Shown here: piece after piece, positions 15,401 through 47,100 of the stretch
How the letters are laid out: the number at the start of each line of letters is the position of its first letter
Numbering within the stretch: the first letter of the stretch is position 1
DNA from: Phallusia mammillata
Taxonomy: Eukaryota
DNA length: 64,000 bases
Reading direction: 5' to 3'
Assembly (NCBI GenBank): GCA_965637545.1
Contig: OZ281495.1
Coordinates: 7,502,001-7,566,000, forward strand
Made by a program: the position numbers and the translations under genes
The notes under the pieces: generated by a model
What the model saw: the letters and a program-made list of their open reading frames with translations, nothing else
Database searches by the model: none
Told to the model about the DNA's origin: nothing

Positions 15401-17333
15401 ATGTCACAACTGGGTATAAACCTTATAACCGGAAACTAAGTGCACAGTCTGCATCTTACTGATCAAAGTCCACGCGTATTTACCATATAGTGGTTTTAGC
15501 ACGTATTCTGCAAAAGTGAGAGCAAGCAAAGAAAAGGTTGAAGGTTTAAGGATAAACGATGAAGTCCAGGCAAAGAGGTACGCCGGTATCGGACCAAAAG
15601 CCTCCAGAAAAACGTAAAACTCCGCGCCGGACTTGGGGATCATTGTGCCCAGTTCGATGTAACACAGTGCACCGAACATGCTCAGGACGCCGCTAGCCAA
15701 CCAGATCTGCGAATTGGTTTTAGCAAGTTAGACACGTGTGTATATAAGACACATTTAAATTTTAAACGGTTAAACAGATTAAGTTTCAACCTAATTCCAT
15801 TGTGGTGAAAATTTTAGTGCTGCCTTCAAATCAACATAATTTAGCGTATAAATGCCTTAACCACATACTTACACCACGAACATTTAATGTTGCTACATTT
15901 GCAAGTTGCTTCTGTTTAGAAAAAAAGCTAACATGGTTGCCATTTAGTTAAATATGTTTTCCAGTTCGAACCACAATGACGCTAAATTAATGATACGAAT
16001 TGATCCGGTTTGACAATATAAATTTATTTAACGCAATTTTAATACAGTTAAAAGCACAACAAATTAAAAATATGCACTGCAACCACAATATATTATTCAT
16101 ATTTTGTTCATACCATCATTCCGACTCCTACAGATCCGGCATTGCTGAATACGCCTTTAGGTGTGATAAAAATCCCCGAACCGATAATGGCACCGACAAT
16201 GAAACCGACGGCGCCGACAAAGCCGATATGTCGGGGTATCGCCACTGCATCATCAGCTATCGTGTGTATAAAAAAAAACCTTCAATTACATGTGTATGTA
16301 GGTAATATGCAGCGGTGAGACTGCATGGTTCTATAGAACCGTCTCGCGAAATTTTATGAGATTAGCGAACCGGTTAGCATTACTGTCTATGGATTTACTG
16401 TAAATAAACCGGCTGAAAAATATGACTTTTGTAATAGAACCGGCTGTCAAAAAATGTAAATCCCACTATTGGTACCATGCGTAAAAAAACGTAGCCCGCG
16501 GCAAGACAAGTGTTTGCTTACGTTTACCACCAAGACATGAAATTGGTGTCATTGTGTGGTTCGTTCAAACCTTAAAATTTGATTTGTGGCCATCAATTTG
16601 TTGCGTAAAAGTGTTTTTGCGACACCTTACCTTTCTGTTTAAAACTTCATGACCGTTTAGCTAAAATAAGCCTCTGACGGGTTTAATATATTCTTTCCTT
16701 TGGACTTATTCGGACCCCACACAGTTGTGCAATGTTTCAAGCTAGCGCAACAAGCTTAATGACGATGACAATAACGGCAATATCATAATTTCTTAAAACG
16801 ATGTTTTAGTCAGCAAAATTATTATTTGCGCATACATAAGGCCAATTACATCCTTGAAATAGCGACAGTATGACTTAGAAAGAACAAAAAGCCGAACGTC
16901 TACACGACATTCGCCATGAACGCGCAGTTTTGACAGCTGTTTCCTGTCTGTGTGTGTAGTTGATACCATACGATTGGTTTCAACTTTCAAAAGAGATTTT
17001 ATAACTTCCTATCCGAACACATACTCCACACAGCTTGTCCAAACTACACCAGTGTCCACAACTTAAATGCAAAAATTAATGTTTAACAAGCCATGTTGTT
17101 ATTCGCACAACACGATACAAAAACAGTCTTTGCCAACGTTTTAGTAGTTAGTTTTGCTTTGTGCTCTGCTGATGCCGCATTTATATTGTAAACCTGATTT
17201 AAATATGACTAAGTTTGATAGATTTTGTATCTTTGCAGCGCGGTTTGTACACTTAGCACTAACTGCGTTAAATAAACTAGCAGACAAAACAACAAACATA
17301 TCCACCTTTAGTATCAGGCTCTGTAGATGGCAT
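9492..17333 (-). CDS. SLC7 light-chain amino-acid transporter, tandem paralog gene B (about 476 aa)
   Basis: Exons 17333-17306 (best candidate first exon, MPSTEPDTK), 16256-16114, 15706-15484, 15115-14930, 14595-14462, 12786-12652, 12083-11883, 11084-10935, 10519-10351, 9553-9492 ([20 protein letters not shown]). Sum is 1431 nt in frame. Exon sizes 223/134/135/201/150 match gene A. The first exon is less certain than the rest. Confidence 0.9.
9626..10037. mobile_element. hAT-type MITE with TAG(A/T)GATG termini
   Basis: TIR TAGAGATGTACCGAAT / ATTCGGTACATCACTA; related ends at 39027-39348, about 40500 and about 53412. Confidence 0.7.
11341..11662. mobile_element. hAT (Buster-type) MITE
   Basis: TIR CAAGGGTGGGCAACCT / AGGTTGCCCACCTATG; perfect 8-bp TSD CTTTAGTT. 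Confidence 0.85.
12420..12636. mobile_element. Palindromic (fold-back) MITE-like element
   Basis: GAGCTACTAACACAGGAAC (19 bp) and GGCGCAACGGAGCATAGGCGT (21 bp) each have an exact reverse complement in the right half. Confidence 0.75.
13081..14378. mobile_element. hAT MITE carrying nested insertions
   Basis: TIR CAGCGGTTCCCAACCT; TSD CTTTACGC/CTTTAGGC; inner element 13189-14215. Confidence 0.8.
13189..14215. mobile_element. Nested hAT-type non-autonomous element
   Basis: TIR CATGGGCGGATCTAG / CTAGATCCGCCCCTG; perfect TSD CACTAGGC. Confidence 0.85.
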
Positions 17334-17995
17334 TGTGTCAAATGCACGACTAAACGACTTCATCAACTTACGGAATGAACTGACGTTCAAAATACTGCGC
17401 GAAAAAGGGCTAAGGTTGCACGCAGTCGACCGTGTCCAATTGTCGCGTTAAGCTTGCCGCCAAAAACAAATATTGTGAAATGACAATCGCCAAAAACCTC
17501 AAAGTGGTATTTTATGTAGTTGGTTTGGAACCCTGTACAGTTGAGTTTATTTCGCTTGGTGAAAGGAAGAAAAGCGGCACTAAAATGGCACTAAAACATT
17601 TAACAAGCTGGAAATAGCTGTGCAACGTTGGTTATGTAGCGCATGAAGTGGAGTGACTGCCAACAAGTAAGGTTGGCGCATTGGGAATAGAAACGACTGG
17701 GGGTGGGGCGTAAGTGGACTCAGTCGAGGGGCTCTATATACTAACAACCAAGTTGCTTTGAATGGAATTTCCACTTCAAGTGCATTATATCTTACAACAA
17801 CCCAAAAGAATGTCAAGCGTTAATGACGCCGGGTTCATGAAATAGAAAAGTAAAATCGTAGGTTTATTGTCGCCGTACCTATCGAGAAAAATAACAATAT
17901 ACAAAGTGTCGAATTGTTGTGGACATTTAAGAGTGTGTTTTTTACATGTAGTAAATGCTGTACATATATATTGTAACGAAGATAACGGCTCCGAT

Positions 17996-18059
17996 ATTGT
18001 CGGACATAGACGTAGGGGAAGTTATACATAGGCTTGCCCTTACGTATATGTTCCATAAT
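17996..18059 (-). ncRNA. pre-miRNA-like hairpin 12; 5p UGGAACAUAUACGUAAGGGCAA (18055-18034), seed class C
   Basis: acata pairs tatgt; acgta pairs tacgt; ggg pairs ccc; aag pairs ctt. Confidence 0.8.
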
Positions 18060-18112
18060 GTCGTGGCCAGATATCAAACATTTCAAATTCCATAGTAGAT
18101 TAAGGCGAACTG

Positions 18113-18180
18113 AGCAGAGGAACTTACACGAAAAGACTTCAGTGATGCTATTAAGCCTGTTCATTGTAAGTTCCATTGCT
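18113..18180 (-). ncRNA. pre-miRNA-like hairpin 11; 5p UGGAACUUACAAUGAACAGGCU (18175-18154), seed class A
   Basis: ggaacttaca pairs tgtaagttcc (10 bp perfect); aggctt pairs aagtct; agca pairs tgct. Confidence 0.82.
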
Positions 18181-18242
18181 AAACCGCTGTGCAATAATGC
18201 TTCTTGATTTATGTAGATTGTAGACCGTGGTACAATTTGAGT

Positions 18243-18304
18243 GGAAATTACGGAAAACAGCCGGAGTATTTTGCGGAATACGGCCTGTTTCCCGTAAGTT
18301 TCAG
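18243..18304 (-). ncRNA. pre-miRNA-like hairpin 10; 5p UGAAACUUACGGGAAACAGGCCG (18303-18281), seed class B
   Basis: ttacgggaa pairs tttccgtaa; acaggccg pairs cggctgt; gaaa pairs tttc. Confidence 0.8.
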
Positions 18305-18340
18305 TCAAAAACAACCGAAAAATCTTTGCAAGTAGTGAAT

Positions 18341-18420
18341 TTTGTTTCAAACTGTGGGACATACTAGCAGTGGCTGGGGTCAACACAGCCCTTACAAGCA
18401 TGTTCCATTGTTTAAACAAA
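18341..18420 (-). ncRNA. pre-miRNA-like hairpin 9; 5p UGGAACAUGCUUGUAAGGGCUG (18407-18386), seed class C
   Basis: ggctg pairs cagcc; acatgct pairs agtatgt; lower stem tttgttt pairs aaacaaa. Confidence 0.8.
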
Positions 18421-18458
18421 AGTTATATAGAACAAGGCCACGTTGACATTAGCAAGGC

Positions 18459-18527
18459 GCACTGGGGATCTTACAGAAAACGGACCAATCGGCTTTGCAC
18501 TGTCCGTTCTAGTAAGTTCCATAGAGC
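18459..18527 (-). ncRNA. pre-miRNA-like hairpin 8; 5p UGGAACUUACUAGAACGGACAG (18521-18500), seed class A
   Basis: aacggac pairs gtccgtt; cttac pairs gtaag; gga pairs tcc. Confidence 0.78.
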
Positions 18528-18580
18528 AGCTGCTTTTATAAACCTATGAAATATCCTGTATGGTGAAGTTTGTCGCTTGT

Positions 18581-18649
18581 GTGCATTGAGACATTATGTT
18601 AAGGACTGGTGAGTTATTACACAGCCCTTACCAGTATGTTCCATACCAC
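18581..18649 (-). ncRNA. pre-miRNA-like hairpin 7; 5p UGGAACAUACUGGUAAGGGCUG (18643-18622), seed class C
   Basis: taagggctg pairs cagtcctta; acat pairs atgt. Confidence 0.75.
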
Positions 18650-18695
18650 GAAAGCAAATAATACTCGGATGCCGCTAGATGGCGTGCGAGAACCT

Positions 18696-18758
18696 CGTGT
18701 TGAACGCTTCCACGGGACAGCCGAGGAACACGGCCTGTTCCGAAGAAGTTTCAAAACG
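18696..18758 (-). ncRNA. pre-miRNA-like hairpin 6; 5p UGAAACUUCUUCGGAACAGGCCG (18753-18731), seed class B
   Basis: acaggccg pairs cggctgt; cttct pairs ggaag; ttgaa pairs ttcaa. Confidence 0.78.
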
Positions 18759-18815
18759 CAAATCCCAAGTGTTCAAGCAGCGGATATAATGATGACATGA
18801 AGAAGTTGCAACAAC

Positions 18816-18883
18816 CAAGCATTGGACATTGCTTGAATCGGTCGCAATGTTGGCAGCCAATTCAAAACAAGTTCCACTGCTTG
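18816..18883 (-). ncRNA. pre-miRNA-like hairpin 5; 5p UGGAACUUGUUUUGAAUUGGCUG (18876-18854), seed class A
   Basis: caagca pairs tgcttg; tgga pairs tcca; ttgaattgg pairs ccgattcaa. Confidence 0.75.
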
Positions 18884-18930
18884 CTGTGCATAGAAATAAT
18901 ACTAAACCGACGACGTGCCATAATAAGCAT

Positions 18931-18989
18931 GCTGAACTTGTTGGAGCAAGCCGAAGTATGCTACCGGCCCGTTCCTAACAAGTTTCAAT
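18931..18989 (-). ncRNA. pre-miRNA-like hairpin 4; 5p UGAAACUUGUUAGGAACGGGCCG (18987-18965), seed class B
   Basis: acttgtt pairs aacaagt; gggccg pairs cggctt; gga pairs tcc. Confidence 0.78.
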
Positions 18990-19046
18990 GGCTCAATGGC
19001 AAAAATTGTTGTTTGTAGAATCGTTCGATGAAACTTCCGACAAAAA

Positions 19047-19113
19047 CCGGGGAACTACCAGTCAAGGGCTGCTTCATTAACGACTCTCAGCCCTTACAAG
19101 TATGTTCCATGGC
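19047..19113 (-). ncRNA. pre-miRNA-like hairpin 3; 5p UGGAACAUACUUGUAAGGGCUG (19109-19088), seed class C GGAACAU
   Basis: aagggctg pairs cagccctt; ggaac pairs gttcc; tac pairs gta. Confidence 0.8.
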
Positions 19114-19159
19114 TTATAGCGGCATGGGCCAAAATCCTTGGTGCAGAAGGTGACACAAG

Positions 19160-19217
19160 CATGTCGAAACTTGCTAAAATCGACCGAAATGATCGGCCAG
19201 TTCCAGTAAGTTTCAAA
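19160..19217 (-). ncRNA. pre-miRNA-like hairpin 2; 5p UGAAACUUACUGGAACUGGCCGA (19215-19193), seed class B GAAACUU
   Basis: ttgaaactt pairs aagtttcga; tggccga pairs tcggtcg. Confidence 0.8.
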
Positions 19218-19272
19218 GTACAAATGTCAAACCGAAACTATATAACTATAAGCTGGTAAAAACACACGGTAA

Positions 19273-19330
19273 TTGGGACTTTACAAGAAAAGGCTGCTAC
19301 TTTAAACCAGCCAGTTCCTGTAAGTTCCAA
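19273..19330 (-). ncRNA. pre-miRNA-like hairpin 1; predicted 5p UGGAACUUACAGGAACUGGCUGG (19329-19307), seed class A GGAACUU
   Basis: 5' arm ttggaact/tacagga/ggctg pairs with 3' arm cagcc/tcttgta/agtcccaa; about 60-nt stem-loop. Confidence 0.8.
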
Positions 19331-21338
19331 ATCCCAAGTGCCAAGATGCTTCTTAAGCCACTTACTTGCTGCTGGTTGAACTGATGCTTTGGTTGTTGAT
19401 GACTCGATGAACTGATGATTTAAACTGCAACCGGGCTAGTTTTTGTACTCTGTGTCTGACAACTTTTTTCACCCAAAGAGAGATAAAAAATTACACGAGG
19501 TGCTTCTAAACAATGCGCAGACGCACCTTATCACCGTGTTTGCAAGTTCGAAGTCAAACAAAACGTGCGCCGCGTCTGATAGTGGCGTTGTTAGGCTCCA
19601 AGGCGCAAGGGACTATTGATAAAGGCTACAAGCCGTTCCTTTCCAGGTGTTAGGAAAGATAAGACCTTTGTTGTACTGTTGTTACGAAATTTGCTGACTA
19701 TTGCGTAACTCTATAGTGACTTACATCCGAACACTGAGGTCATATCTTAGAGTTTCAGTTGTTTCCACATCAGTTCTTTAAAAACACATTAGATGTATAG
19801 ATGAACATTTTATCAAATTCAACATATACTATGACATATTTTCTTTCCTCAAATCCATATTTGCCTGAAGATAGTAAACTATAGATGTCACTCAATTGCA
19901 AACCCCAAATGCCACTTAAATAACGCAATTGCCCAATGGTCCCCATATTTTGTTTGTCTCAACGTTTTCGTTTTAAATAATTTTGGTAGGGTTTCTTTCC
20001 GGTCATTGTGCACGGTTGTATGATTTGGCCAATGCCAGATCATATTATGTCACCGCAACCAAAATGTAAACAAGGGTAATATCCCGGTGCATGCCCTATA
20101 TGAGTTTTCGTATTTTCAACTATGATGTATGTGTCACTTATAGTGTAGTTTTCGTCTGTGTAGTGTGGTATCACTGCAATTAATAGAATCAAAATTCATA
20201 CCATACAATGCAATTTGACAACAAAAGATGCACGAATCGTTTTAGAAAGAGTCATGTGGGTAAATGTGGCGACTAAAACACAACTTTGTTTCATCAATAT
20301 GTTATGGAATGACTACTTGAATGAGTCTGTAAAAGAAATCAAAAAACTTTTCAAAAACGGCTGTTGCTGCCAGACAGTATGTATAAACGAGTATTGCTCT
20401 TCCAGCAGTTTTTGTGTGTTACCGATGCTTCTGTGGCTTCATAGGCATTTCGTTTTCCAAGACACGCCATTACCTTGATGAAAAAAAATGCTAGAAGAGC
20501 TTCATGTGGGGGAAACAGTATTTGGCGACTGAAACACCGATTAAATTGAAAACAAATTTGTTCCATCAACATGTCATGGAATTACCATTTGAACGTTTAT
20601 AAGAAACAAATCATTGAAATGCATGAACATTAAATACATTAGTTTAATATTCCTGTAATATTTTTCTCTTTCTTTCAGTTTGATCAAAAAAATCCAGACA
20701 GGGTCAGCATTAAACCTTATTTGTCTTTACAACTTAATATCAGCTCCGATTTCGATTATGTCACGGAAACATGGGTGTTACATCCGTTTAATTCTGCGAT
20801 AAACAAACAACCCTTAATTTCCTTTACTCTTGCCGGAGTTGCCTGATAGGATTACGTCACACGAAAAAATCGTTATTTGGTATTTGGAGCCAAATTTTGA
20901 ACAGTTAGTCCAAATTCAACAAAATTATTCCTATACCGACAAACCGTTTTAGCTGCTAGGCACATTTCAACGTTTTTGAAGCAAAATGTCAGGGATTGAT
21001 TACCACCGAAAATATTTTACAAATTCATCACCATTTAATCAACAGTCTTGTGTAAAAAAATATTTGTTAGCTTATTGATGTAGTTGTATTTTGTACACTT
21101 TCTTGGAAACTACATGCAAATGTGAGATGTCGTTTTACGCATATTAATTTTCATATTGTCAACCAGTTTCAAATACGATGTCATGGTTTAAACTTTAAAG
21201 TTTAATTAAAGTATAATCGTGAATATATAAGCGATTGCTGCCAGGCATAATATCAAGGTGTTTTGTTGCGTTGTGACGTACTTTAACTCTTTTTTCCTTT
21301 GTTTATCGTTACTGTACTATAGTCGCATTCAGTGTTAT

Positions 21339-21387
21339 TTACCCTGATGAAGACGACCTGTATAGGACGTCGAAACGTCGGAATAAA
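21339..21387 (+). mobile_element. Penelope-like element 3' end remnant with minimal type-I hammerhead (CTGATGA-stem II-GAAACGTC) followed by AATAAA
   Basis: CTGATGA 21344-21350; stem II gacg.cct/agg.cgtc; GAAA 21372-21375; CGTC; AATAAA 21382-21387. This is the known architecture of PLE pseudo-LTR hammerheads. Confidence 0.65.
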
Positions 21388-22560
21388 ATTACACTTGCCA
21401 GAAGAGCTCTATAAATTTTATAATCGTGAATGTTATTATTTTTACGTACAGCCATACAATTCCCATTTCAAATATAACTTGAATTGTTCAACGGCCAATG
21501 TGTTTAAAATGTAATTTTTTTGTGGCTTGTGTTATTTTTCCACCCGACTTACGCAGTCCACTACGGACATTTCATTTCTTTCGGTGTCCAGAAAAGGTTA
21601 AAGGTCATAAATCTATTCGCGGGTAGGATAAAATGCTTATTGTGAACGCGTTAAACATCATGTAAACGACCGTTGCAACACACACATATAAAGGTCGTGC
21701 ACACCAGAGCACTTACACCTGTGCCTTCATGTCCCGCAGTCAGGCCACCACGCGAGCGTTTTACAATTTACAGCCCAACACCAAATTGTGACGTCATTGG
21801 CTCGTTGACGTTGTCGGTGGCAATAAAACTGGACTATTTGTTCAATTTGATTGAGGCGTTCAGGTGATTGACATTTACGTAAAAGCGTGGATCCTGTCGG
21901 CTCTCTGCGCAAATGATCTAAGCAGCAATAACACGTCTATTTATTTTTATGGGATTTTACTACACCGTTTGTCGTTCTCTTCAGTATTTACGAGCCTTTG
22001 ATTGTCAACACGGGTATGAGTTAAATGTCAAGACTGTATTTTGTTGTCACTTCCACCTTGTAACGATCTGCTCTGCTTTATATTGCGACCAGAATTGTAA
22101 CTACATTCGTTTTTTTGGGGGGTAGTGTTTGGGCTTAAGTTTAAATAAAAAAAGGCTTGATTCGGGCCTGACCTTATATTCGGCCAAATTTGTGTCCTTT
22201 TTAAGTTAGTAGATCTAATATTGGGGTCTAATTAGGATTTTTTTGAAAAAAATGAAGGTCAAAACCTGGTTTCGGGCTTTGTTTCGGGTTTGGATCACAA
22301 TTTTGCGTATAATTTAGATTTGGATGCAACTGATCTGTTCATCAACTCATGTAACTGCAACCCAACAAATCTTTTCAAACAGTAACAATTTTGATGCAGG
22401 GTGTTTTTATGTATGACAGTTCGCAGCGAATGTGTTGTATATGTAAAAAAGCACAAATATCTTATTTTGATATTGTTTAAAACACGAAGTGTATTGTTTG
22501 CTACATTTTATCTGGAGCATTACACATACACTAGCCAATATACGGCCGATCTCTCGTCAC

Positions 22561-32900: not shown

Positions 32901-33934
32901 TCGATGCACGGCCGGGACGAGAAAAAATATCGCGACTGACGGGAGTTTAAAAGCTGTCGCGCCGCAATGTTTCGCCACATTGTTGTATTCGGCTTCGAGA
33001 CCAGCACATCTCCTGATATTAGCAGCGCTAAAACGCAAAGGTAGTTTACTAGAACAGTTTATAAACAAATATTTTAGCTCAACAAAATGAGTAACGTATT
33101 TGAGACGTTTTTTCAAGGTTTTACATCATTATAGGTATATAAATGTAGAAAGACAGCGCTGCGGTTAAGATTATGTTCAGTATCTGTACACTTTATAAGT
33201 CTAAATTTAGTTTTTGACAGAGTGTTTTATTAACGAAGTATTTATTAACGAAGTGGTCTTTAACAATTAACTTTACCAAAACAAACCAATTTGTTTTGCG
33301 ACCATTTCTGGCAACAGTCGCTTTTGTCGATAACCGGGGTACATGGAATCGTATCGTCCTAAGAAACAATGGTCACGAAAATTGCAAGTGAATGAACAAA
33401 TTAGCGACGGTCAATTCCGGTCGCAGACCAACACTCAGCCGTCTGGCACTTTCCATAAGCGGCGAGAAAGTGACAAACGACCGACATTTGCAATGAGTTG
33501 GCCCAGACGTCGTCGCTTGCAACATTACGACATAGCGCCTTGGCGCGCACACACGGTAACAGGTGTAACGACGCCGTAGAGTGATAGATGAGGTTGTTAG
33601 CAAGAAAGTTTTGCTGTATGTTTGTGCAGAAGAGATTACAGTGAGAATTTGATCTAAAGAGAGCTGCCTTAGAGACTTTATTTTGAACAGTTTTTTTGAA
33701 TTTTTGATTAACATAATGTCATTTGAAGCTTAAATTGTGTGTTTTTCGTTAAATCAACTTGCAGTCCAATTCAAATGTTAGAATAAAAACACGCTTTATT
33801 GTTATTATTTTTACAAAATGTTACACTGTGGCAATACATTTTGGTGCAATCTAACCCATTTTCTCTATATTTAGATCAATCTATTACGAACTTATTCAGT
33901 GCATATTAAACCAACTTATTTGAAACTTACAAGA

Positions 33935-35413
33935 ATGCCACGACCAGGCAGAGATTCGTACGGAGACCAGAAACCTCCATATTCCTATATCGCCCTCACA
34001 GCAATGGCGATTCAATCGTCTCCCAACAAAATGATGAGCTTGTCGGAAATTTACCGTTACATCATGGACCGTTTTCCATTCTACCGGAAAAATACGCAGC
34101 GCTGGCAGAACTCTCTGCGTCACAATCTATCCTTCAACGATTGTTTCGTCAAAGTTCCGCGGCGCGGAGATCAACCTGGTAAAGGCAGTCTTTGGGCGAT
34201 GCACCCCACTTGCGGGGAAATGTTTGAAAACGGAAGTTTCCTGCGTCGTCGCAAAAGGTTCAAAACTGAAGACAAAAACCAACAGTCATCAGCACACAGC
34301 TATCCCCACGACGCTTTCAACCAAAGAATGTTCAACCAATCAACGGGCGAACCTGTACACCACGTGATCAACAACAGAGGGGTGTACGACGTCCCAGGGT
34401 TAAGGGCCTTTCCCCAGTACCCGGGTTACCCTCTACCTGGACAACATCGTCACCCAACTGTTCCTCCGACCCCGATGTATCCACAGATGACACCAGGCAG
34501 TCCAGCAAACACCGCGGCAGCTGTGGCGTATTTCCAAACCGCTATGGCGGGTTACCGAAACGCCATGGCGTCTTTGTCAATGCGGGGAAATTCACTTCAC
34601 CCACTGATGAGGGGTTACGGCTTTCCGCACTCCGAAGCTTTCCGAAGCTTTTTGGCGCCGAGGCGATCGGCCGACGACGGCGTTTTATCGGCGCCCACAC
34701 GAAGCGAGTGCGATTCGGCCAGCGAGGTAAAATCAAACTCTTTCGACTCGAGTCGTTCCGGAGTCGGTAGCAGCTCGCCACTCGCTCAGAGTTCGTCAGG
34801 CGATGAGTCGCACTCGAATGACCGAGTTACGAGTTCCAAAGCCATCAGCTTCTCGATTGAGAATATCATTAGTGGAAGATTTTCCCCAAAGAGCGCAAGC
34901 AAACAAAAGTCAACCGAAGCAGGACCAAGGCGCAAGCGACAATCTAGCGATGGACCCGAAACTCCAAGCAAGAAACTCAAGCTCGACGGCGATACCCCGG
35001 CAAAATTGGACGACAAATCAAGCTCAAAAATACAAAATGGCGACATCGGCGTTTCGCAGACGTCTCCTACCGAACTTCGCTTGCAGTGCGCCCCGCGAAC
35101 AAGCACCCCAAAGTCCGACGGTTTTTACTTGCCCTTCTACCTGCAAAAACGCGACGACCAAACTTCACCAAGCGCACAGGCTGATACGATTTCTATTCCG
35201 ACATCGGGAGGAAGAAATGGCGACAGTGTAGCGCATCACCCAACCAGCACAGCGCCAACAACAAACTTTAGCGCTTGTTATTTGTCGCAGGGACAGAGAA
35301 TGTTGCAATTGGGCCAATCCACTCACAGTCCTACGTCTGAATCTAAAGACCCACCACTTGCTTATTCGGCGTTTGCCCGCCTAAAGCGTTTCACCGAGTT
35401 GCAAGTCCAATAG
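33935..35413 (+). CDS. FoxB: Forkhead box B transcription factor, single coding exon, 492 aa
   Basis: N-terminus [28 protein letters not shown]...[16 protein letters not shown]...GKGSLW...[14 protein letters not shown] is diagnostic of FoxB; eh1 Groucho-binding motif FSIENII at 34850-34870. The ORF-track start at 33899 is an upstream GTG; the ATG is at 33935. Confidence 0.97.
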
Positions 35414-44120: not shown

Positions 44121-47100
44121 TCACGACTGGCCACGCTTGAGTGATCGCCGCCTGCTCCGAGCAGTTTTACCTTCTGCTCTGGCCGCCGCCACAAGGGATG
44201 TTACTGTGATCTGACTTGGCATTTCGGCGGGCTTGCAAACTCCCAAATCCCGCCGTAGCACCAAGCCGGACTCAAAGGGACGCGGGGCGGTGGCGATAGT
44301 TACCTCCTCTGGTTCAGGCCTGGAGTATTCGTAGCAAATCAAACGCCCGGTGTCTGGCGAAATCTTGGCGGTGATTACTGGCAGCTCAGTTCGGTGCTTA
44401 CACGTCACGGGGTCACCAGAGGTCATGCTAATACGGACGGGGTCGCTGACCTTGGGATTCGCTCTGGGGTTACTTGCGGTCAAAGTTGGGTCTTTGGGGT
44501 CGTACCTCCAAAAAGCAAGATCGGTTTTGCTGGAACTTGGTTCGTCGTTGGAATAGTTGAAGCCACTTGCGTGGTTGTAGGAAGGGTCGTCTTCAAACCC
44601 CGGGAGAAAGTAGGAAGTGTCGACGGGAGAAAGGTCGTCCTCGTCCGGCGTAAGTTCAGCGTCGGAGTTGGCCGGACAACCCGGGATCTGACCAGGGTTT
44701 TTTATTCCGTCCTCATTGTTTTCATGGCGGCTGGTAAAAAAGCACAGACTGTTATAAGGTTGCTTCAAGTCGTAGGCACTTGTATACAGCCGAGTTGTAA
44801 GTCGGGCCGAGTTCGGGCTTCTAATAAAAAATAAAAAACAGGCCTGATTCGGGCTTGACACTATGTCAGTAATTTTTTGAATGAATTTAACTAGGTAAGT
44901 AGCTAGTTGTTGGACCTGCTCAAACAGACCTAAAACGCCTTGTTCAAGACCAATTGTCTATAACTATCTATTGTGTTTGTTGTCTTGGCCTTTCCTGGTG
45001 CTTAAATGTAGCCTATAGGCCTGTCAAACAAACTTTCGGACATAAAGGGCTTCATAAAAACGATTTTGATTCGGGCCGGGTTTCGGGCTTGTGCTTTTGG
45101 GTTCGGGACGGATTCAGGCTCCAATTTCAGGCTCGTTTAGTTTACAGTTTGAATTCAAAGCCGAGAATAAAAACACAAAGACAAAAATGGAAAACAGACG
45201 GGTTCAAAAAATCCAAGTTCACGGGTTAAATGTTGGGGGAGAAATGATCAAGAACTAACACTTGAGGGTTCCAAATTTCAGTACAATACACAAAAATCGT
45301 ACAACAAAAAAGAACCCACGTCTTGCTATGTAGCTTGCTGGCCGGTTGATTCGGTACAACGCCTTTAATAGGCCTGGTGTACTATGTTCGTATCAAAAAA
45401 TTACCTTTTATTCACACCAATAGAAACAAGACTTACCATATCCCATCATCGTCAATATCAAACACAGGCAATCCTCTGGTTTTGTTCCTCGCTTTTAAGT
45501 GTAAAAGAACTTCGCAAAACTTGCTTCCCATTTGTTCCAGGTCCTTGGTTGAAAGCTGTTTTCCCCTTAGCATACCTTGGTCGCACCCACAGTAAGTACT
45601 TTCCATTGTATAACTGCGCGCCACGCCCATTTCACGCCACACAACAACACGTGCTGTGGACGCTTTGGCCTTTTCCACCACAAAATTGCAGTTCTTCATT
45701 GAGAAAGTTGGAGCAAAATGGTTGAGGAGACGGGGTAAGGCCTGAGAGATATTTGTAACAAAATATAGGAACAAAATTACACAAAAGATTTAAGTAGAAA
45801 TAATAAACATTTAAATTTCAACTAAGAAAAAAATCAATTAACAATAATAGAAAAAAATATAATGGCAAGAATATAACCAGTTTGTACAATTGGACACCCA
45901 TTTATTACGTTGATATTTGGACCATCTATCCGCAAACCCTAGAATTCGGTTATATTAGCGTTTAAAAGTTAGTTTAAAGAATATTACAGGTAATGAAAGT
46001 TTATCTTAAAATTTTCTTGTAAATTGTTTATTTTAATAGCTGTACAAAATAAAATTTTTGCAGCATATTTTTAGGTAACACACTTAGTTGTGACAAAACT
46101 GCGTAAGTATTATGACTTTGTGTAAAGACAAACGTTGCTAATACAAGCCGTATTCTTTGGCCTATTGTTCAGCATTTAAAATCAATAAAGTTAAGAATTC
46201 ACCTTGCAGCCAGAGTCATCGGGACCATCCAAAACAGTTGAAGCTTCACCTGATGCTATTGAATCCTTATGCGAGCAACCGTACAAAAATACGTTCATCT
46301 TACGAGAGTGACCGTGGTAATCACAATAAACCAGTGGCGCTGTAAAAACGGAAATATTCTATTCTATAGATAAATATATTTATTATATACTGTAACTCAA
46401 ATGCATATTTAATACAGTGCTTTATCGGGAATAGTTTGCAGCTGTTTATTAAATTCCAGACTACACCTTCACCTTGACTTCTTAAAGTCGGCCGTTATAA
46501 GTTGGGAAAGACAGATAAACAATAAATATGTCAGTCTGCTTACATTTATGTATTGAGTACAGATACTGAAGGAGGCCTTTGGTGTGAAAGATTGTAGGAA
46601 AGAGTTGGGGATGTGGGTCGTTCCACGTCCGGTTCAAGTCATCACCACTCAAAGAACACCGATGACTGGGAAAAAATAGAAGAGGTTGATTAGTATTTCA
46701 AAGCATTAAACGACACAGTGATGCCAAGTCTCAATTGTTAATCTTAGCTTAAGAGTGATTATACTGAGCAATATCAGATCCCCCAACAATCAGCAAAGTC
46801 ATTTACCATCACCGTTTAAATGGCATCTTTGCTTCCCACAAAACACAGAATAAAACATATTAAAACGTGACTGTTTACTTAAAATAACTTATTTTCAGTT
46901 GTTAATCGTTGGTGGTTAGCTATATGCACAAAAGAGCTGTGACGTAGCAATAGATTGATGGCAACGTCAGAGTTCACCTAAGGTCATGACAAAAGCGTAT
47001 TTAGAGTTTTACTATTAAGTATGGCACCAAAAAACTTATTAAAGACTCCAGTGTCATGGAACGTTCACCAATGTTGCGACACCATGAACATTAAAACGGA

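What the first reader, a model, noticed from the sequence alone, without database searches (positions are those of the whole stretch)
17996..19330. Polycistronic cluster of 12 paralogous pre-miRNA-like hairpins
Seen: twelve ~60-80-nt stem-loops on the minus strand, with predicted 5p starts at 19329, 19215, 19109, 18987, 18876, 18753, 18643, 18521, 18407, 18303, 18175 and 18055 (spacing 104-128, mean about 116 nt). Each 5' arm has a 22-23-nt segment starting with U and reading UG(G/A)AAC(U/A)U. Loops and spacers share no visible similarity, while each 3' arm differs in sequence yet still pairs with its own 5' arm. Known: that pattern (conserved 5p arm, structure kept by covariation, 5' U) marks a duplicated miRNA family rather than a satellite, and ascidians are known to carry lineage-specific miRNA clusters. 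Inference: one primary transcript yields a 12-member family. I recall Ciona miR-4001/miR-4006-type arms starting UGGAAC but cannot verify this, so novelty is open.
Basis: partly seen in the sequence, partly recalled or inferred. Interest (0 to 1): 0.92.

Follow-up and report, generated by a model that had tools for sequence, protein, structure and literature searches.

The report
Twelve-hairpin microRNA cluster in Phallusia
This is a real tandem cluster of twelve microRNA precursor hairpins in the sea squirt Phallusia mammillata, belonging to three microRNA families (mir-4000/4001/4006) so far described only in Ciona, so it shows that this "Ciona-specific" cluster is much older than thought.

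Summary
Twelve minus-strand hairpins have 5' arms starting at the listed positions, 104-128 nt apart. All twelve fold better than shuffles and each 3' arm pairs preferentially with its own 5' arm (permutation p<1e-5).

New evidence supports Microprocessor processing. All twelve have an 8-14 bp basal stem. CNNC lies 16-18 nt past the inferred 3' cut in 12/12 (p=3e-10). UG lies at -14 in 6/12 (p=9e-5).

The genome is Phallusia mammillata (neighbouring FoxB 99% identical). The arms fall into three seed classes, four each, matching Ciona mir-4000, mir-4001 and mir-4006. All twelve meet the published family criterion. Rfam scores them below threshold and no paper found reports them outside Ciona.

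I also found a homologous array next to FoxB in Clavelina lepadiformis, in the same gene order (CCP1-FoxB-array). No member lies within 10 kb of FoxB in Ciona intestinalis.

RNA contigs are absent over the array. They begin at its last two or three hairpins and continue, spliced on the minus strand, into an SLC7A9-like transporter gene.

No small-RNA reads could be examined, so mature products remain inferred.

Verdict: a real microRNA cluster, a new member of a known kind, of moderate interest.

The parts
19272..19329 (-). hairpin h01, mir-4001-type (5p UGGAACUU...)
   Evidence: -23.7 kcal/mol, 8-bp basal stem, CNNC at +17, UG at -14
19163..19215 (-). hairpin h02, mir-4000-type (5p UGAAACUU...)
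   Evidence: Rfam mir-4000 28.4 bits (below the gathering score), -22.8 kcal/mol, CNNC at +17, UG at -14
19048..19109 (-). hairpin h03, mir-4006-type (5p UGGAACAU..GUAAGGGC)
   Evidence: -25.5 kcal/mol, 2 mismatches to Ci-mir-2203-3, CNNC at +18
18931..18987 (-). hairpin h04, mir-4000-type
   Evidence: -24.8 kcal/mol, 3 mismatches to Ci-mir-2200-1, CNNC at +16, UG at -14; weak Rfam mir-4018 hit
18821..18876 (-). hairpin h05, mir-4001-type
   Evidence: -19.6 kcal/mol, 2 mismatches to Ci-mir-2201-5, 13-bp basal stem, CNNC at +16, UG at -14
18699..18753 (-). hairpin h06, mir-4000-type
   Evidence: first 20 nt identical to Ci-mir-2200-5 / csa-miR-4000e, loop different; CNNC at +18, UG at -14
18585..18643 (-). 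hairpin h07, mir-4006-type
   Evidence: -18.1 kcal/mol, 1 mismatch to Ci-mir-2203-3, CNNC at +17
18463..18521 (-). hairpin h08, mir-4001-type (most divergent arm)
   Evidence: -20.3 kcal/mol, z -1.56 (weakest), 4 mismatches to Ci-mir-2201-10, CNNC at +18
18353..18407 (-). hairpin h09, mir-4006-type
   Evidence: differs from csa-miR-n5 only at nt 1; CNNC at +18
18241..18303 (-). hairpin h10, mir-4000-type
   Evidence: -23.7 kcal/mol, 4 mismatches to Ci-mir-2200-1, CNNC at +18
18116..18175 (-). hairpin h11, mir-4001-type
   Evidence: best Rfam mir-4000 hit (33.1 bits, E 4e-4), -22.8 kcal/mol, edit distance 2 to Ci-mir-2201-7, CNNC at +18
17999..18055 (-). hairpin h12, mir-4006-type, last of the array
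   Evidence: -18.0 kcal/mol, 1 mismatch to Ci-mir-2203-1, 14-bp basal stem, CNNC at +18, UG at -14
17306..18105 (-). RNA-covered leader and first coding exon of the SLC7A9-like gene (ATG at 17363 or 17333); RNA contigs end at 18034-18105, and at 18250 in one run
16257..17305 (-). intron, GT..AG on the minus strand; spliced in one run and retained in others; contains a dispersed repeat at 16198-16591
16114..16256 (-). coding exon 2 of the SLC7A9-like transporter
15404..15706 (-). coding exon 3 of the SLC7A9-like transporter (Pfam AA_permease_2 positions 40-118, E 7e-8)
33899..35413 (+). FoxB (single ORF), syntenic anchor; identifies the organism
   Evidence: 99% identical to P. mammillata FoxB
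44133..44717 (-). last coding exon of the CCP1-type peptidase M14 gene, second syntenic anchor
   Evidence: tblastn hits from the Clavelina and Ciona loci, E 2e-23 and 9e-30

Best explanation
The region is a polycistronic cluster of 12 canonical microRNA genes in Phallusia mammillata. It is homologous to the Ciona mir-4000/mir-4001/mir-4006 cluster (Ci-mir-2200/2201/2203 on scaffold 71 in Hendrix et al. 2010).

Shown here:
- There are twelve minus-strand stem-loops, each with an upper stem of about 22 bp and an 8-14 bp basal stem.
- A CNNC motif lies 16-18 nt downstream of the inferred 3' cut in all twelve, and a UG lies 14 nt upstream of the 5' cut in six.
- There are three 5p seed classes, four hairpins each, interspersed in the order BACABACBCABC: GAAACUU (A), GGAACUU (B) and GGAACAU (C).
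- Arms co-vary, while loops and spacers are unrelated.
- Homologous arrays exist in Ciona (literature) and Clavelina (found here).

Inferred:
- RNA polymerase II transcribes the array on the minus strand from a start site upstream of 19330.
- Drosha/DGCR8, positioned by the basal junction, the UG motif and SRSF3 bound to CNNC, cuts just before the U of UGRAAC and releases 53-63-nt pre-miRNAs.
- Dicer then yields 5'-U 5p guides of about 22 nt.
- Conservation of nt 1-8 and 13-20 with free nt 9-12 fits seed plus 3'-supplementary target pairing.
- The long RNA that survives starts at the last two or three hairpins and runs into the downstream SLC7A9-like gene. The array therefore most likely lies in that gene's primary-transcript leader (about 60%) rather than forming a fully separate unit.
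For: - Motif and positions.
- Folding against shuffles.
- Hairpin sizes.
- Cognate-arm test: -22.7 vs -13.8 kcal/mol, p<1e-5, with compensatory changes at 10 positions.
- Basal stems of 8-14 bp in 12/12, mean z -2.05.
- CNNC at +16..+18 in 12/12 (binomial p 3e-10) and UG at -14 in 6/12 (p 9e-5). These are the positions reported for human pri-miRNAs (PMC6004053).
- Conservation: 5p z=30.7, 3p z=5.7, loops and spacers near 0.
- Family match: all 12 arms are within 4 mismatches or edits of published Ciona members and share their nt 2-7 seed. For h01 the script's tie-break listed a member of another seed class at 3 mismatches. The same-seed match to Ci-mir-2201-1, also 3 mismatches, was checked by eye.
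- Rfam best hits are mir-4000 and mir-4018.
- In Ciona these families give up to about 1.5e5 reads. Relatives (csa-miR-4000f, 4018a/b) were validated in C. savignyi by northern blot and in situ hybridisation, and csa-miR-4000f by a Mapk1 reporter assay (PMC5831862).
- Clavelina has a FoxB-linked array with the same seeds, CNNC at +16..+18 in 10/11 and UG at -14 in 5/11. Its arms are 94.8% identical between duplicated copies against 85.1% for the surrounding sequence (p 1.6e-5).
- RNA: zero contig depth over 18365-20334 in four runs, against depth 17-174 downstream. Contig ends differ between runs (18034-18250). Two minus-strand GT..AG introns are present. Seven RNA runs hold only 11-19% of the words of 17700-19700.
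Against: - No small-RNA reads were available, so mature length, 5' homogeneity, 2-nt overhangs and arm choice are untested.
- None of the hairpins reaches the Rfam mir-4000 gathering score (best 33.1 vs 58 bits).
- Sense hairpins are not significantly more stable than antisense ones (9/12, p=0.09). Strand assignment therefore rests on the 5'-U conserved arm, the asymmetric CNNC/UG motifs and the splice orientation downstream.
- No promoter or 5' end was found, and there is no RNA contig over hairpins 1-9 or upstream. The array could simply be silent in the sampled libraries.
- Contigs carry no direction and drop low-depth sequence.
- The CNNC window was applied after I had seen the offsets, although 16-18 nt is the literature window.
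Confidence: 0.88

Rival explanations
1. The hairpins act mainly in cis. They would be Drosha cleavage sites in the 5' leader of the SLC7A9-like transporter transcript, so Microprocessor activity destabilises or gates the mRNA (as with the DGCR8 5'UTR hairpins), and the small RNAs would be by-products.
For: RNA contigs run from the last hairpins into the transporter's coding exons on the same strand. Coverage falls stepwise into the array.
Against: The 5p arms keep seed and nt 13-20 across Phallusia, Ciona and (seed only) Clavelina, while the rest of each hairpin drifts. That pattern indicates selection on a trans-acting guide. In Ciona the family members are abundant, and one has a validated target. 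Twelve sites are far more than cleavage alone would need.
Confidence: 0.05
2. The array is a structured tandem repeat or a transposon-derived inverted-repeat array with no small-RNA function.
For: The units are regularly spaced at about 116 nt, and some antisense strands also fold and start NGRAACUU.
Against: TRF finds no tandem repeat. Spacers and loops are unrelated while arms co-vary. There are no dispersed copies in 64 kb. CNNC and UG sit at Microprocessor distances. Homologues with the same seeds exist in two other ascidian lineages, and the arms in Clavelina are under purifying selection.
Confidence: 0.03
3. The hairpins are precursors of another small-RNA class, such as endo-siRNAs from hairpin RNA or piRNA-cluster transcripts.
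For: None that is specific. It remains only because no small-RNA size profile is available.
Against: The stems are about 33-36 bp with terminal loops of 6-17 nt, which is miRNA-sized rather than long hairpin RNA. The conserved 5'-U arm with a fixed register, and CNNC/UG at fixed distances, are Drosha features. Published Ciona reads from the homologous loci were called as miR/miR* pairs.
Confidence: 0.03

Closest known systems
Ciona intestinalis type A (C. robusta) scaffold_71 cluster: 25 miRs of Ci-mir-2200/2201/2203, i.e. miRBase cin-mir-4000/4001/4006 (Hendrix et al. 2010, PMC2884542)
   Same: It has the same three seeds (GAAACUU, GGAACUU, GGAACAU) and the same class-specific 3' halves (..GGAAC.GG..GAAC.GGC..GUAAGGGC). 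The 5p arm is dominant, and the hairpins are similarly short (e.g. mir-2200-4, 54 nt). The families are interspersed in one dense same-strand array with little spacer.
   Different: There are 12 members in 1.33 kb here, against about 25 in about 4 kb. Only one arm is identical over 20 nt, and its loop differs. The species belongs to a different family, with an ancestor shared with Ciona several hundred million years ago (abstract of 10.1101/371005). No member lies within 10 kb of FoxB in Ciona intestinalis, whereas here FoxB is 14.6 kb away. Orthology to scaffold 71 rather than to the scaffold 20 cluster is inferred from family composition only.
Ciona savignyi csa-miR-4018a/4018b/4000f cluster and csa-miR-4006/n1/n3/n5/n7/n13 (Zhang et al. 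2018, PMC5831862)
   Same: It is the same superfamily. h09 differs from csa-miR-n5 only at nt 1, and h06 equals csa-miR-4000e over 23 of 24 nt. These are the only members with northern blot, in situ (mesenchyme-like cells, switched off at metamorphosis) and reporter (Mapk1) evidence.
   Different: The validated C. savignyi cluster is the mir-4018/4000 type (the scaffold-20 type in C. robusta), whose CGGAACAU/AGGAACAU arms are absent here. No expression data exist for Phallusia.
FoxB-linked hairpin array in Clavelina lepadiformis
   Same: It has the same three seeds, 47-59-nt hairpins, CNNC at +16..+18 in 10/11 and UG at -14 in 5/11. The gene order CCP1 - FoxB - array is the same, and the array is on the CCP1 strand.
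   Different: The 3' halves of the 5p arms differ from the Phallusia/Ciona consensus. Spacing is wider (128-1033 nt), with a segmental duplication of about 2.8 kb at 85% identity. FoxB is not inverted relative to CCP1. The array runs towards the end of the fetched locus, so its full extent is unknown.
Large same-seed tandem miRNA arrays in other animals, such as zebrafish mir-430 and vertebrate mir-17~92 (from general knowledge, not tested here)
   Same: They share the principle: many paralogous hairpins with shared or near-identical seeds, processed from one primary transcript, which raises dosage and slightly diversifies targeting.
   Different: The seeds and lineage are unrelated. This array has three seeds that differ by single nucleotides.

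Membership tests
mir-4000 / mir-4001 / mir-4006 seed families (definition of Hendrix et al. 2010: exact nt 2-7 seed and at most 4 mismatches to a known member's mature sequence) | Exact seed (nt 2-7) shared with a known member | tested here: met
   all 12 arms share nt 2-7 with a Ciona member of the same class (4 x GAAACU, 4 x GGAACU followed by U, 4 x GGAACA). For h01 the same-seed match is Ci-mir-2201-1, which I checked by eye.
mir-4000 / mir-4001 / mir-4006 seed families | At most 4 mismatches over the 20-nt mature sequence to a known member | tested here: met
   best mismatch counts are 3, 2, 2, 3, 2, 0, 1, 4, 1, 4, 4 and 1. By edit distance h11 is 2 from Ci-mir-2201-7. Only 13 published arms were used as references.
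Rfam RF03485 mir-4000 (covariance model built from Ciona precursors) | Score at or above the curated gathering score (58 bits) | tested here: not met
   the best hit is 33.1 bits (E 4e-4), and only 4 of 12 hairpins have E<1. I therefore do not file them under the Rfam model's threshold. That threshold is a curators' cut-off for automatic annotation, not the biological definition of the family.
Canonical animal miRNA gene (Microprocessor/Dicer substrate) | Single stem-loop with about 35 bp of stem (about 22 bp upper plus about 11 bp basal) flanked by single strands | tested here: met
   12/12. Basal stems are 8-14 bp, with mean z -2.05 against shuffled flanks.
Canonical animal miRNA gene | Primary-sequence determinants at fixed distances: CNNC 16-18 nt 3' of the cut and UG 14 nt 5' of the cut (PMC6004053) | tested here: met
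   CNNC in 12/12 (p 3e-10) and UG at -14 in 6/12 (p 9e-5). An apical UGU/GUG is present in 5/12; its enrichment was not tested.
Canonical animal miRNA gene | Reads of 21-23 nt from both arms with homogeneous 5' ends and 2-nt 3' overhangs | not testable with these tools
   Only assembled contigs of long-RNA runs were offered. Small-RNA reads cannot form 31-mers, and none was listed.
Canonical animal miRNA gene | Evolutionary conservation of the mature arm with structure kept by compensatory change | tested here: met
Polycistronic cluster (one primary transcript) | A single transcript spanning all hairpins | tested here: inconclusive
   no contig covers hairpins 1-9. RNA starts at hairpins 10-12 and continues downstream on the same strand. 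This fits a processed precursor but does not show it.

The most novel reading that the evidence does not exclude
The twelve hairpins and the SLC7A9-like amino-acid transporter mRNA come from one primary transcript, with the whole array lying in the transporter's 5' leader (or in an outron removed by spliced-leader trans-splicing). Microprocessor cleavage would then couple, or trade off, miRNA output and transporter expression. The locus CCP1-FoxB-array would be an ancient ascidian synteny block kept across at least two orders.
Probability: 0.3. Interest if true: 0.6.

Novelty: new member of a known kind. Interest (0 to 1): 0.4.

Why it matters
The mir-4000/4001/4006 clusters are among the most highly expressed Ciona miRNAs. 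They were introduced as "found only in C. intestinalis" (PMC2884542), and the only functional work is in C. savignyi (PMC5831862). Finding all three seeds in Phallusia (Ascidiidae) and in Clavelina (Aplousobranchia) dates the family, and its split into three seeds, to before these lineages diverged. In both species the array lies in the same CCP1-FoxB neighbourhood.

The comparison gives a clean conservation pattern: seed and nt 13-20 are kept, nt 9-12 are free. It also shows that the vertebrate CNNC and basal-UG determinants are used at the same distances in tunicates.

It provides twelve precise, testable mature sequences for a model ascidian that has no miRNA annotation in the literature I could search. 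It also shows that Rfam gathering thresholds miss this family outside Ciona. The adjacency to a transporter gene offers a testable case of a miRNA array in an mRNA leader.

Tried and rejected
- **Structural alignment.** MAFFT alignment of the 12 hairpins plus RNAalifold gave no consensus structure, because the 3' arms are not in register. Model R1 is therefore sequence-only. I replaced it with per-hairpin folds and an own-versus-other arm test.
- **Strand asymmetry.** Comparing sense and antisense stability gave no significant result.
- **More members or relics.** I found none in the window or flanking the array. The string UCGAACUUGC at about 19551 does not form a hairpin.
- **Published mature sequences.** Searching the supplements of two papers found only h06 as an exact match. 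This ruled out C. robusta and C. savignyi as the source species.
- **Literature on Phallusia miRNAs or these families outside Ciona.** Nothing was found.
- **Ciona synteny.** Two FoxB entries were not on record. A third gave locus L004, which has no array within 10 kb either side of FoxB. Two unidentified FoxB-like loci (L002, L003) also have none.
- **Reaching the Ciona SLC7 orthologue.** The representative library returned mainly unnamed fragments, and a search with a full-length hit returned only fish SLC7A9. Whether the Ciona cluster also sits upstream of an SLC7 gene is unresolved.
- **Loose ends at 21320-21415.** This block behaves as a dispersed repeat, not an upstream exon.
- **Promoter.** The promoter tool is bacterial and was not used. 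No convincing TATA or initiator was seen by eye upstream of 19330.
Full report
**1. What is in the sequence.**

Reading the minus strand of 17800-19600 shows the motif UG(G/A)AAC(U/A)U twelve times. A pattern search finds 36 matches in the whole window on both strands, against 19.0 ± 4.2 expected. Twelve of them lie on one strand within 1.33 kb.

Spacings run from 104 to 128 nt, with a mean of 115.8. Tandem Repeats Finder reports no array there, so this is not a satellite at the sequence level. The window has no N.

**2. The hairpins are real and the arms co-vary.**

- With 12 nt of upstream flank, every unit folds more stably than dinucleotide shuffles (z -1.6 to -5.0).
- Trimmed, each unit is a single 52-61-nt stem-loop of -18 to -25.5 kcal/mol.
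- Pairing every 5' arm with every 3' arm gives -22.7 kcal/mol on average for cognate pairs and -13.8 for non-cognate ones. None of 100,000 permutations reached the cognate mean. Same-class non-cognate pairs average only -17.6.
- Compensatory pair types occur at 5p positions 3 (G:C/A:U), 7 (U:A/A:U), 9, 11, 12, 14, 17, 18, 21 and 22.
- The 5' arms are strongly alike (z=30.7 versus shuffles) and the 3' arms weakly so (z=5.7). Loops (z=-0.5) and spacers (z=1.8) are not alike.
- A sliding-window fold shows strongly structured windows only between 18070 and 19360, apart from one isolated window near 20080 (z -3.0). Both flanks are otherwise near z=0.
- A sequence profile of the twelve and a relaxed motif-plus-fold scan find no other member in the 64 kb.

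**3. Features that point specifically to the Microprocessor.**

- With 20-nt flanks added, all twelve hairpins extend into a basal stem of 8-14 bp (mean z -2.05 against shuffled flanks). This gives the stem of about three helical turns that Drosha/DGCR8 measures.
- I placed the 3' cut from the structure, as the partner of 5p nt 1 plus a 2-nt overhang. A CNNC motif then starts 16-18 nt downstream in 12 of 12 hairpins. The chance rate is 0.16 per hairpin, giving a binomial p of 3e-10, and the peak is at +18.
- A UG lies exactly 14 nt upstream of the 5p start in 6 of 12 hairpins (background 0.072, p 9e-5).
- These are the positions reported for human pri-miRNAs: CNNC 16-18 nt and basal UG 14 nt from the cleavage sites (PMC6004053).
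- The two motifs lie on opposite sides of the hairpin. They therefore also support the minus strand as the processed strand. Thermodynamic asymmetry does not settle this (sense is better in 9/12, p=0.09).
- Caveat: I looked at the offsets before formalising the test, although the window used is the literature one.

**4. Which organism and which family.**

The ORF at 33899-35413 (+) carries a Forkhead domain. It is 99% identical to FoxB of Phallusia mammillata, while Ciona FoxB proteins are 40-41% identical. The window is therefore Phallusia mammillata.

Rfam at gathering thresholds finds only a U6 gene. A permissive scan gives below-threshold hits of four hairpins to mir-4000 (best 33.1 bits against 58) and one to mir-4018, both Ciona families.

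Hendrix et al. 2010 describe a Ciona cluster of about 4 kb on scaffold 71. [quoted passage not shown] Their table lists:
- Ci-mir-2200: UGAAACUU...GGAAC.GG
- Ci-mir-2201: UGGAACUU...GAACAGGC
- Ci-mir-2203: UGGAACAU....GUAAGGGC

The C. savignyi table gives the miRBase names mir-4000, mir-4001 and mir-4006 for the same sequences.

The window's arms fall into exactly these classes, four each, in the order B-A-C-A-B-A-C-B-C-A-B-C. By the authors' own family criterion (exact nt 2-7 and at most 4 mismatches), all twelve qualify:
- h06 equals Ci-mir-2200-5 over 20 of 20 nt.
- h09 differs from csa-miR-n5 only at nt 1.
- For h01 I checked the same-seed match by eye.

In both genera, nt 1-8 and 13-20 are kept while nt 9-12 vary. 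For example, class C reads UGGAACAU-NNNN-GUAAGGGC in both. This is the pattern expected of a guide strand that uses seed plus 3'-supplementary pairing.

I found no paper that reports it in Phallusia or anywhere outside Ciona. Hendrix et al. called the clusters "found only in C. intestinalis".

**5. A third lineage and a conserved neighbourhood.**

I used FoxB proteins as handles to fetch the FoxB loci of other ascidians.

*Clavelina lepadiformis* (L001):
- The motif is enriched, with 20 matches against 6.8 expected.
- At least eleven hairpins of 47-59 nt with UGAAACUU, UGGAACUU, UGGAACAU or AGGAACA(U/C) arms lie on one strand, 4-10 kb downstream of FoxB. There are also two profile hits.
- CNNC lies at +16..+18 in 10 of 11 and UG at -14 in 5 of 11.
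- Part of that array is a segmental duplication at 85% identity. Between the two copies the hairpin arms are 94.8% identical against 85.1% elsewhere (Fisher p 1.6e-5), so the arms are under purifying selection.

*Gene order* (translated comparison):
- The last exon of a CCP1-type peptidase M14 gene lies about 9 kb upstream of FoxB in Clavelina and Ciona. It matches the window at 44133-44717 on the minus strand.
- Read in the CCP1 direction, Phallusia is CCP1 - FoxB (inverted) - array - SLC7 gene, and Clavelina is CCP1 - FoxB - array. The array is on the CCP1 strand in both.

*Ciona intestinalis* (L004): the order is CCP1 - FoxB - BCL_N gene - MRPL46 gene, with no family member within 10 kb. 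Two unidentified FoxB-like loci also lack it.

The three seeds therefore predate the separation of the Ciona, Phallusia and Clavelina lineages. Phallusia and Ciona are "several hundred million years" apart according to the abstract of 10.1101/371005. The FoxB linkage is shared by at least two of the three lineages.

**6. Transcription.**

The runs are coded. Seven RNA runs hold only 11-19% of the sampled words of 17700-19700, while DNA runs hold 81-93%.

I laid four runs from four studies on 16001-21900.
- Contigs cover about 16.6 kb up to 18034, 18045, 18052 or 18105, and in one run up to 18250, at word depths of 17-174.
- Depth is zero across 18365-20334 in all four runs.
- One joint (16256 to 17306) has CT..AC ends on the + strand, which is GT..AG on the minus strand.
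- Loose ends in three runs map to 15677-15706 and define a second minus-strand GT..AG intron, 15707-16113.

The material is therefore spliced RNA from the same strand as the hairpins.

The spliced frame reads [19 protein letters not shown] / [30 protein letters not shown]..., with the ATG at 17363 or 17333. The next exon matches Pfam AA_permease_2, and the nearest full-length relative is a b(0,+)-type transporter, SLC7A9. A second copy of the gene follows further down.

So the long RNA that survives begins in the last two or three hairpins and is the leader of an SLC7A9-like mRNA. Hairpins 1-9 and everything upstream are missing. The upper ends differ between runs and depth falls stepwise into the array. 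That fits 3' remnants of a precursor cut at successive hairpins better than it fits a fixed start site.

However, contigs have no direction and lose low-depth sequence, and the array might simply be silent in these libraries. I put about 60% on a shared transcription unit. My one read-laying run is used, so this cannot be refined here.

**7. Mechanism, and what is shown versus inferred.**

- Shown: hairpin architecture, covariation, motif placement, family identity, conservation in three lineages, selection on the arms, and same-strand RNA downstream.
- Inferred: Pol II transcription from upstream of 19330; Drosha cuts immediately 5' of U1 and at the listed 3' ends, releasing 53-63-nt pre-miRNAs; Dicer processing to 5p guides of about 22 nt with three seeds; target repression.
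- By analogy only: expression in mesenchyme-like cells and a link to MAPK signalling, as for csa-miR-4000f (PMC5831862).

**8. Rivals.**

- A satellite or transposon array is excluded by unrelated spacers, covariation, the absence of dispersed copies and cross-species conservation.
- A purely cis-acting set of Drosha sites in the transporter's leader is possible as an added role. It does not explain selection on the seed and on nt 13-20.
- Other small-RNA classes do not fit the stem length or the fixed register.

**9. Verdict.**

The cluster is a new member of a known kind: the Phallusia homologue of the Ciona mir-4000/4001/4006 cluster.

Three additions go beyond the finding:
- canonical CNNC and UG determinants in all or half of the members;
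- a homologous array and conserved CCP1-FoxB-array order in Clavelina;
- placement directly upstream of, and probably co-transcribed with, an SLC7A9-like gene.

Interest is moderate. A specialist would find the age and synteny of the family useful rather than surprising. The missing decisive evidence is small-RNA sequencing.

Noticed in passing
window 8620-8726 (+): A U6 spliceosomal snRNA gene (Rfam RF00026, 116.7 bits, full length). It lies between two tandem SLC7A9-like transporter genes on the opposite strand.
   Followed up: no
window about 17363-10217 (-) and about 5377 to the window start (-): Two tandem paralogous b(0,+)-type (SLC7A9-like) amino-acid transporter genes. The first starts directly downstream of the miRNA array.
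   Followed up: partly
window 16198-16591: This stretch lies inside the transporter's first intron. It has RNA contig depth 5-15 times that of its surroundings and many loose ends running into unrelated sequence in all four runs, so it behaves as a dispersed, transcribed repeat.
   Followed up: no
window 21320-21415: A 96-nt block covered by RNA contigs, with loose ends on both sides in several runs. One side is just polymorphic genomic sequence and the other matches nothing in the window. It is probably another dispersed repeat rather than an upstream exon.
   Followed up: partly
window 33899-35413 (+) versus 44133-44717 (-): FoxB is inverted relative to the CCP1-type peptidase M14 gene in Phallusia (convergent orientation). 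In Clavelina (L001) and Ciona intestinalis (L004) the two genes are in tandem, about 9 kb apart.
   Followed up: partly
L001 15280-17493 versus 18039-20355: In Clavelina lepadiformis the miRNA array contains a segmental duplication at about 85% identity, offset by about 2.8 kb. A 113-nt unit carrying one hairpin is present four times. The array may continue beyond the end of the fetched locus.
   Followed up: partly
window 18118-18175 (+) and 19165-19215 (+): The antisense strands of h11 and h02 also fold (-17.3 and -17.4 kcal/mol) and begin AGGAACUU and CGAAACUU, which are family-like seeds. Hendrix et al. reported antisense miRs from the related Ciona scaffold-20 cluster.
   Followed up: no
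runs X10 and X13: Two DNA runs labelled as a second organism (B) hold 69% and 20% of the 31-mers of this stretch. That is too similar for a distant species, so it suggests either a very close relative or a labelling difference.
   Followed up: no
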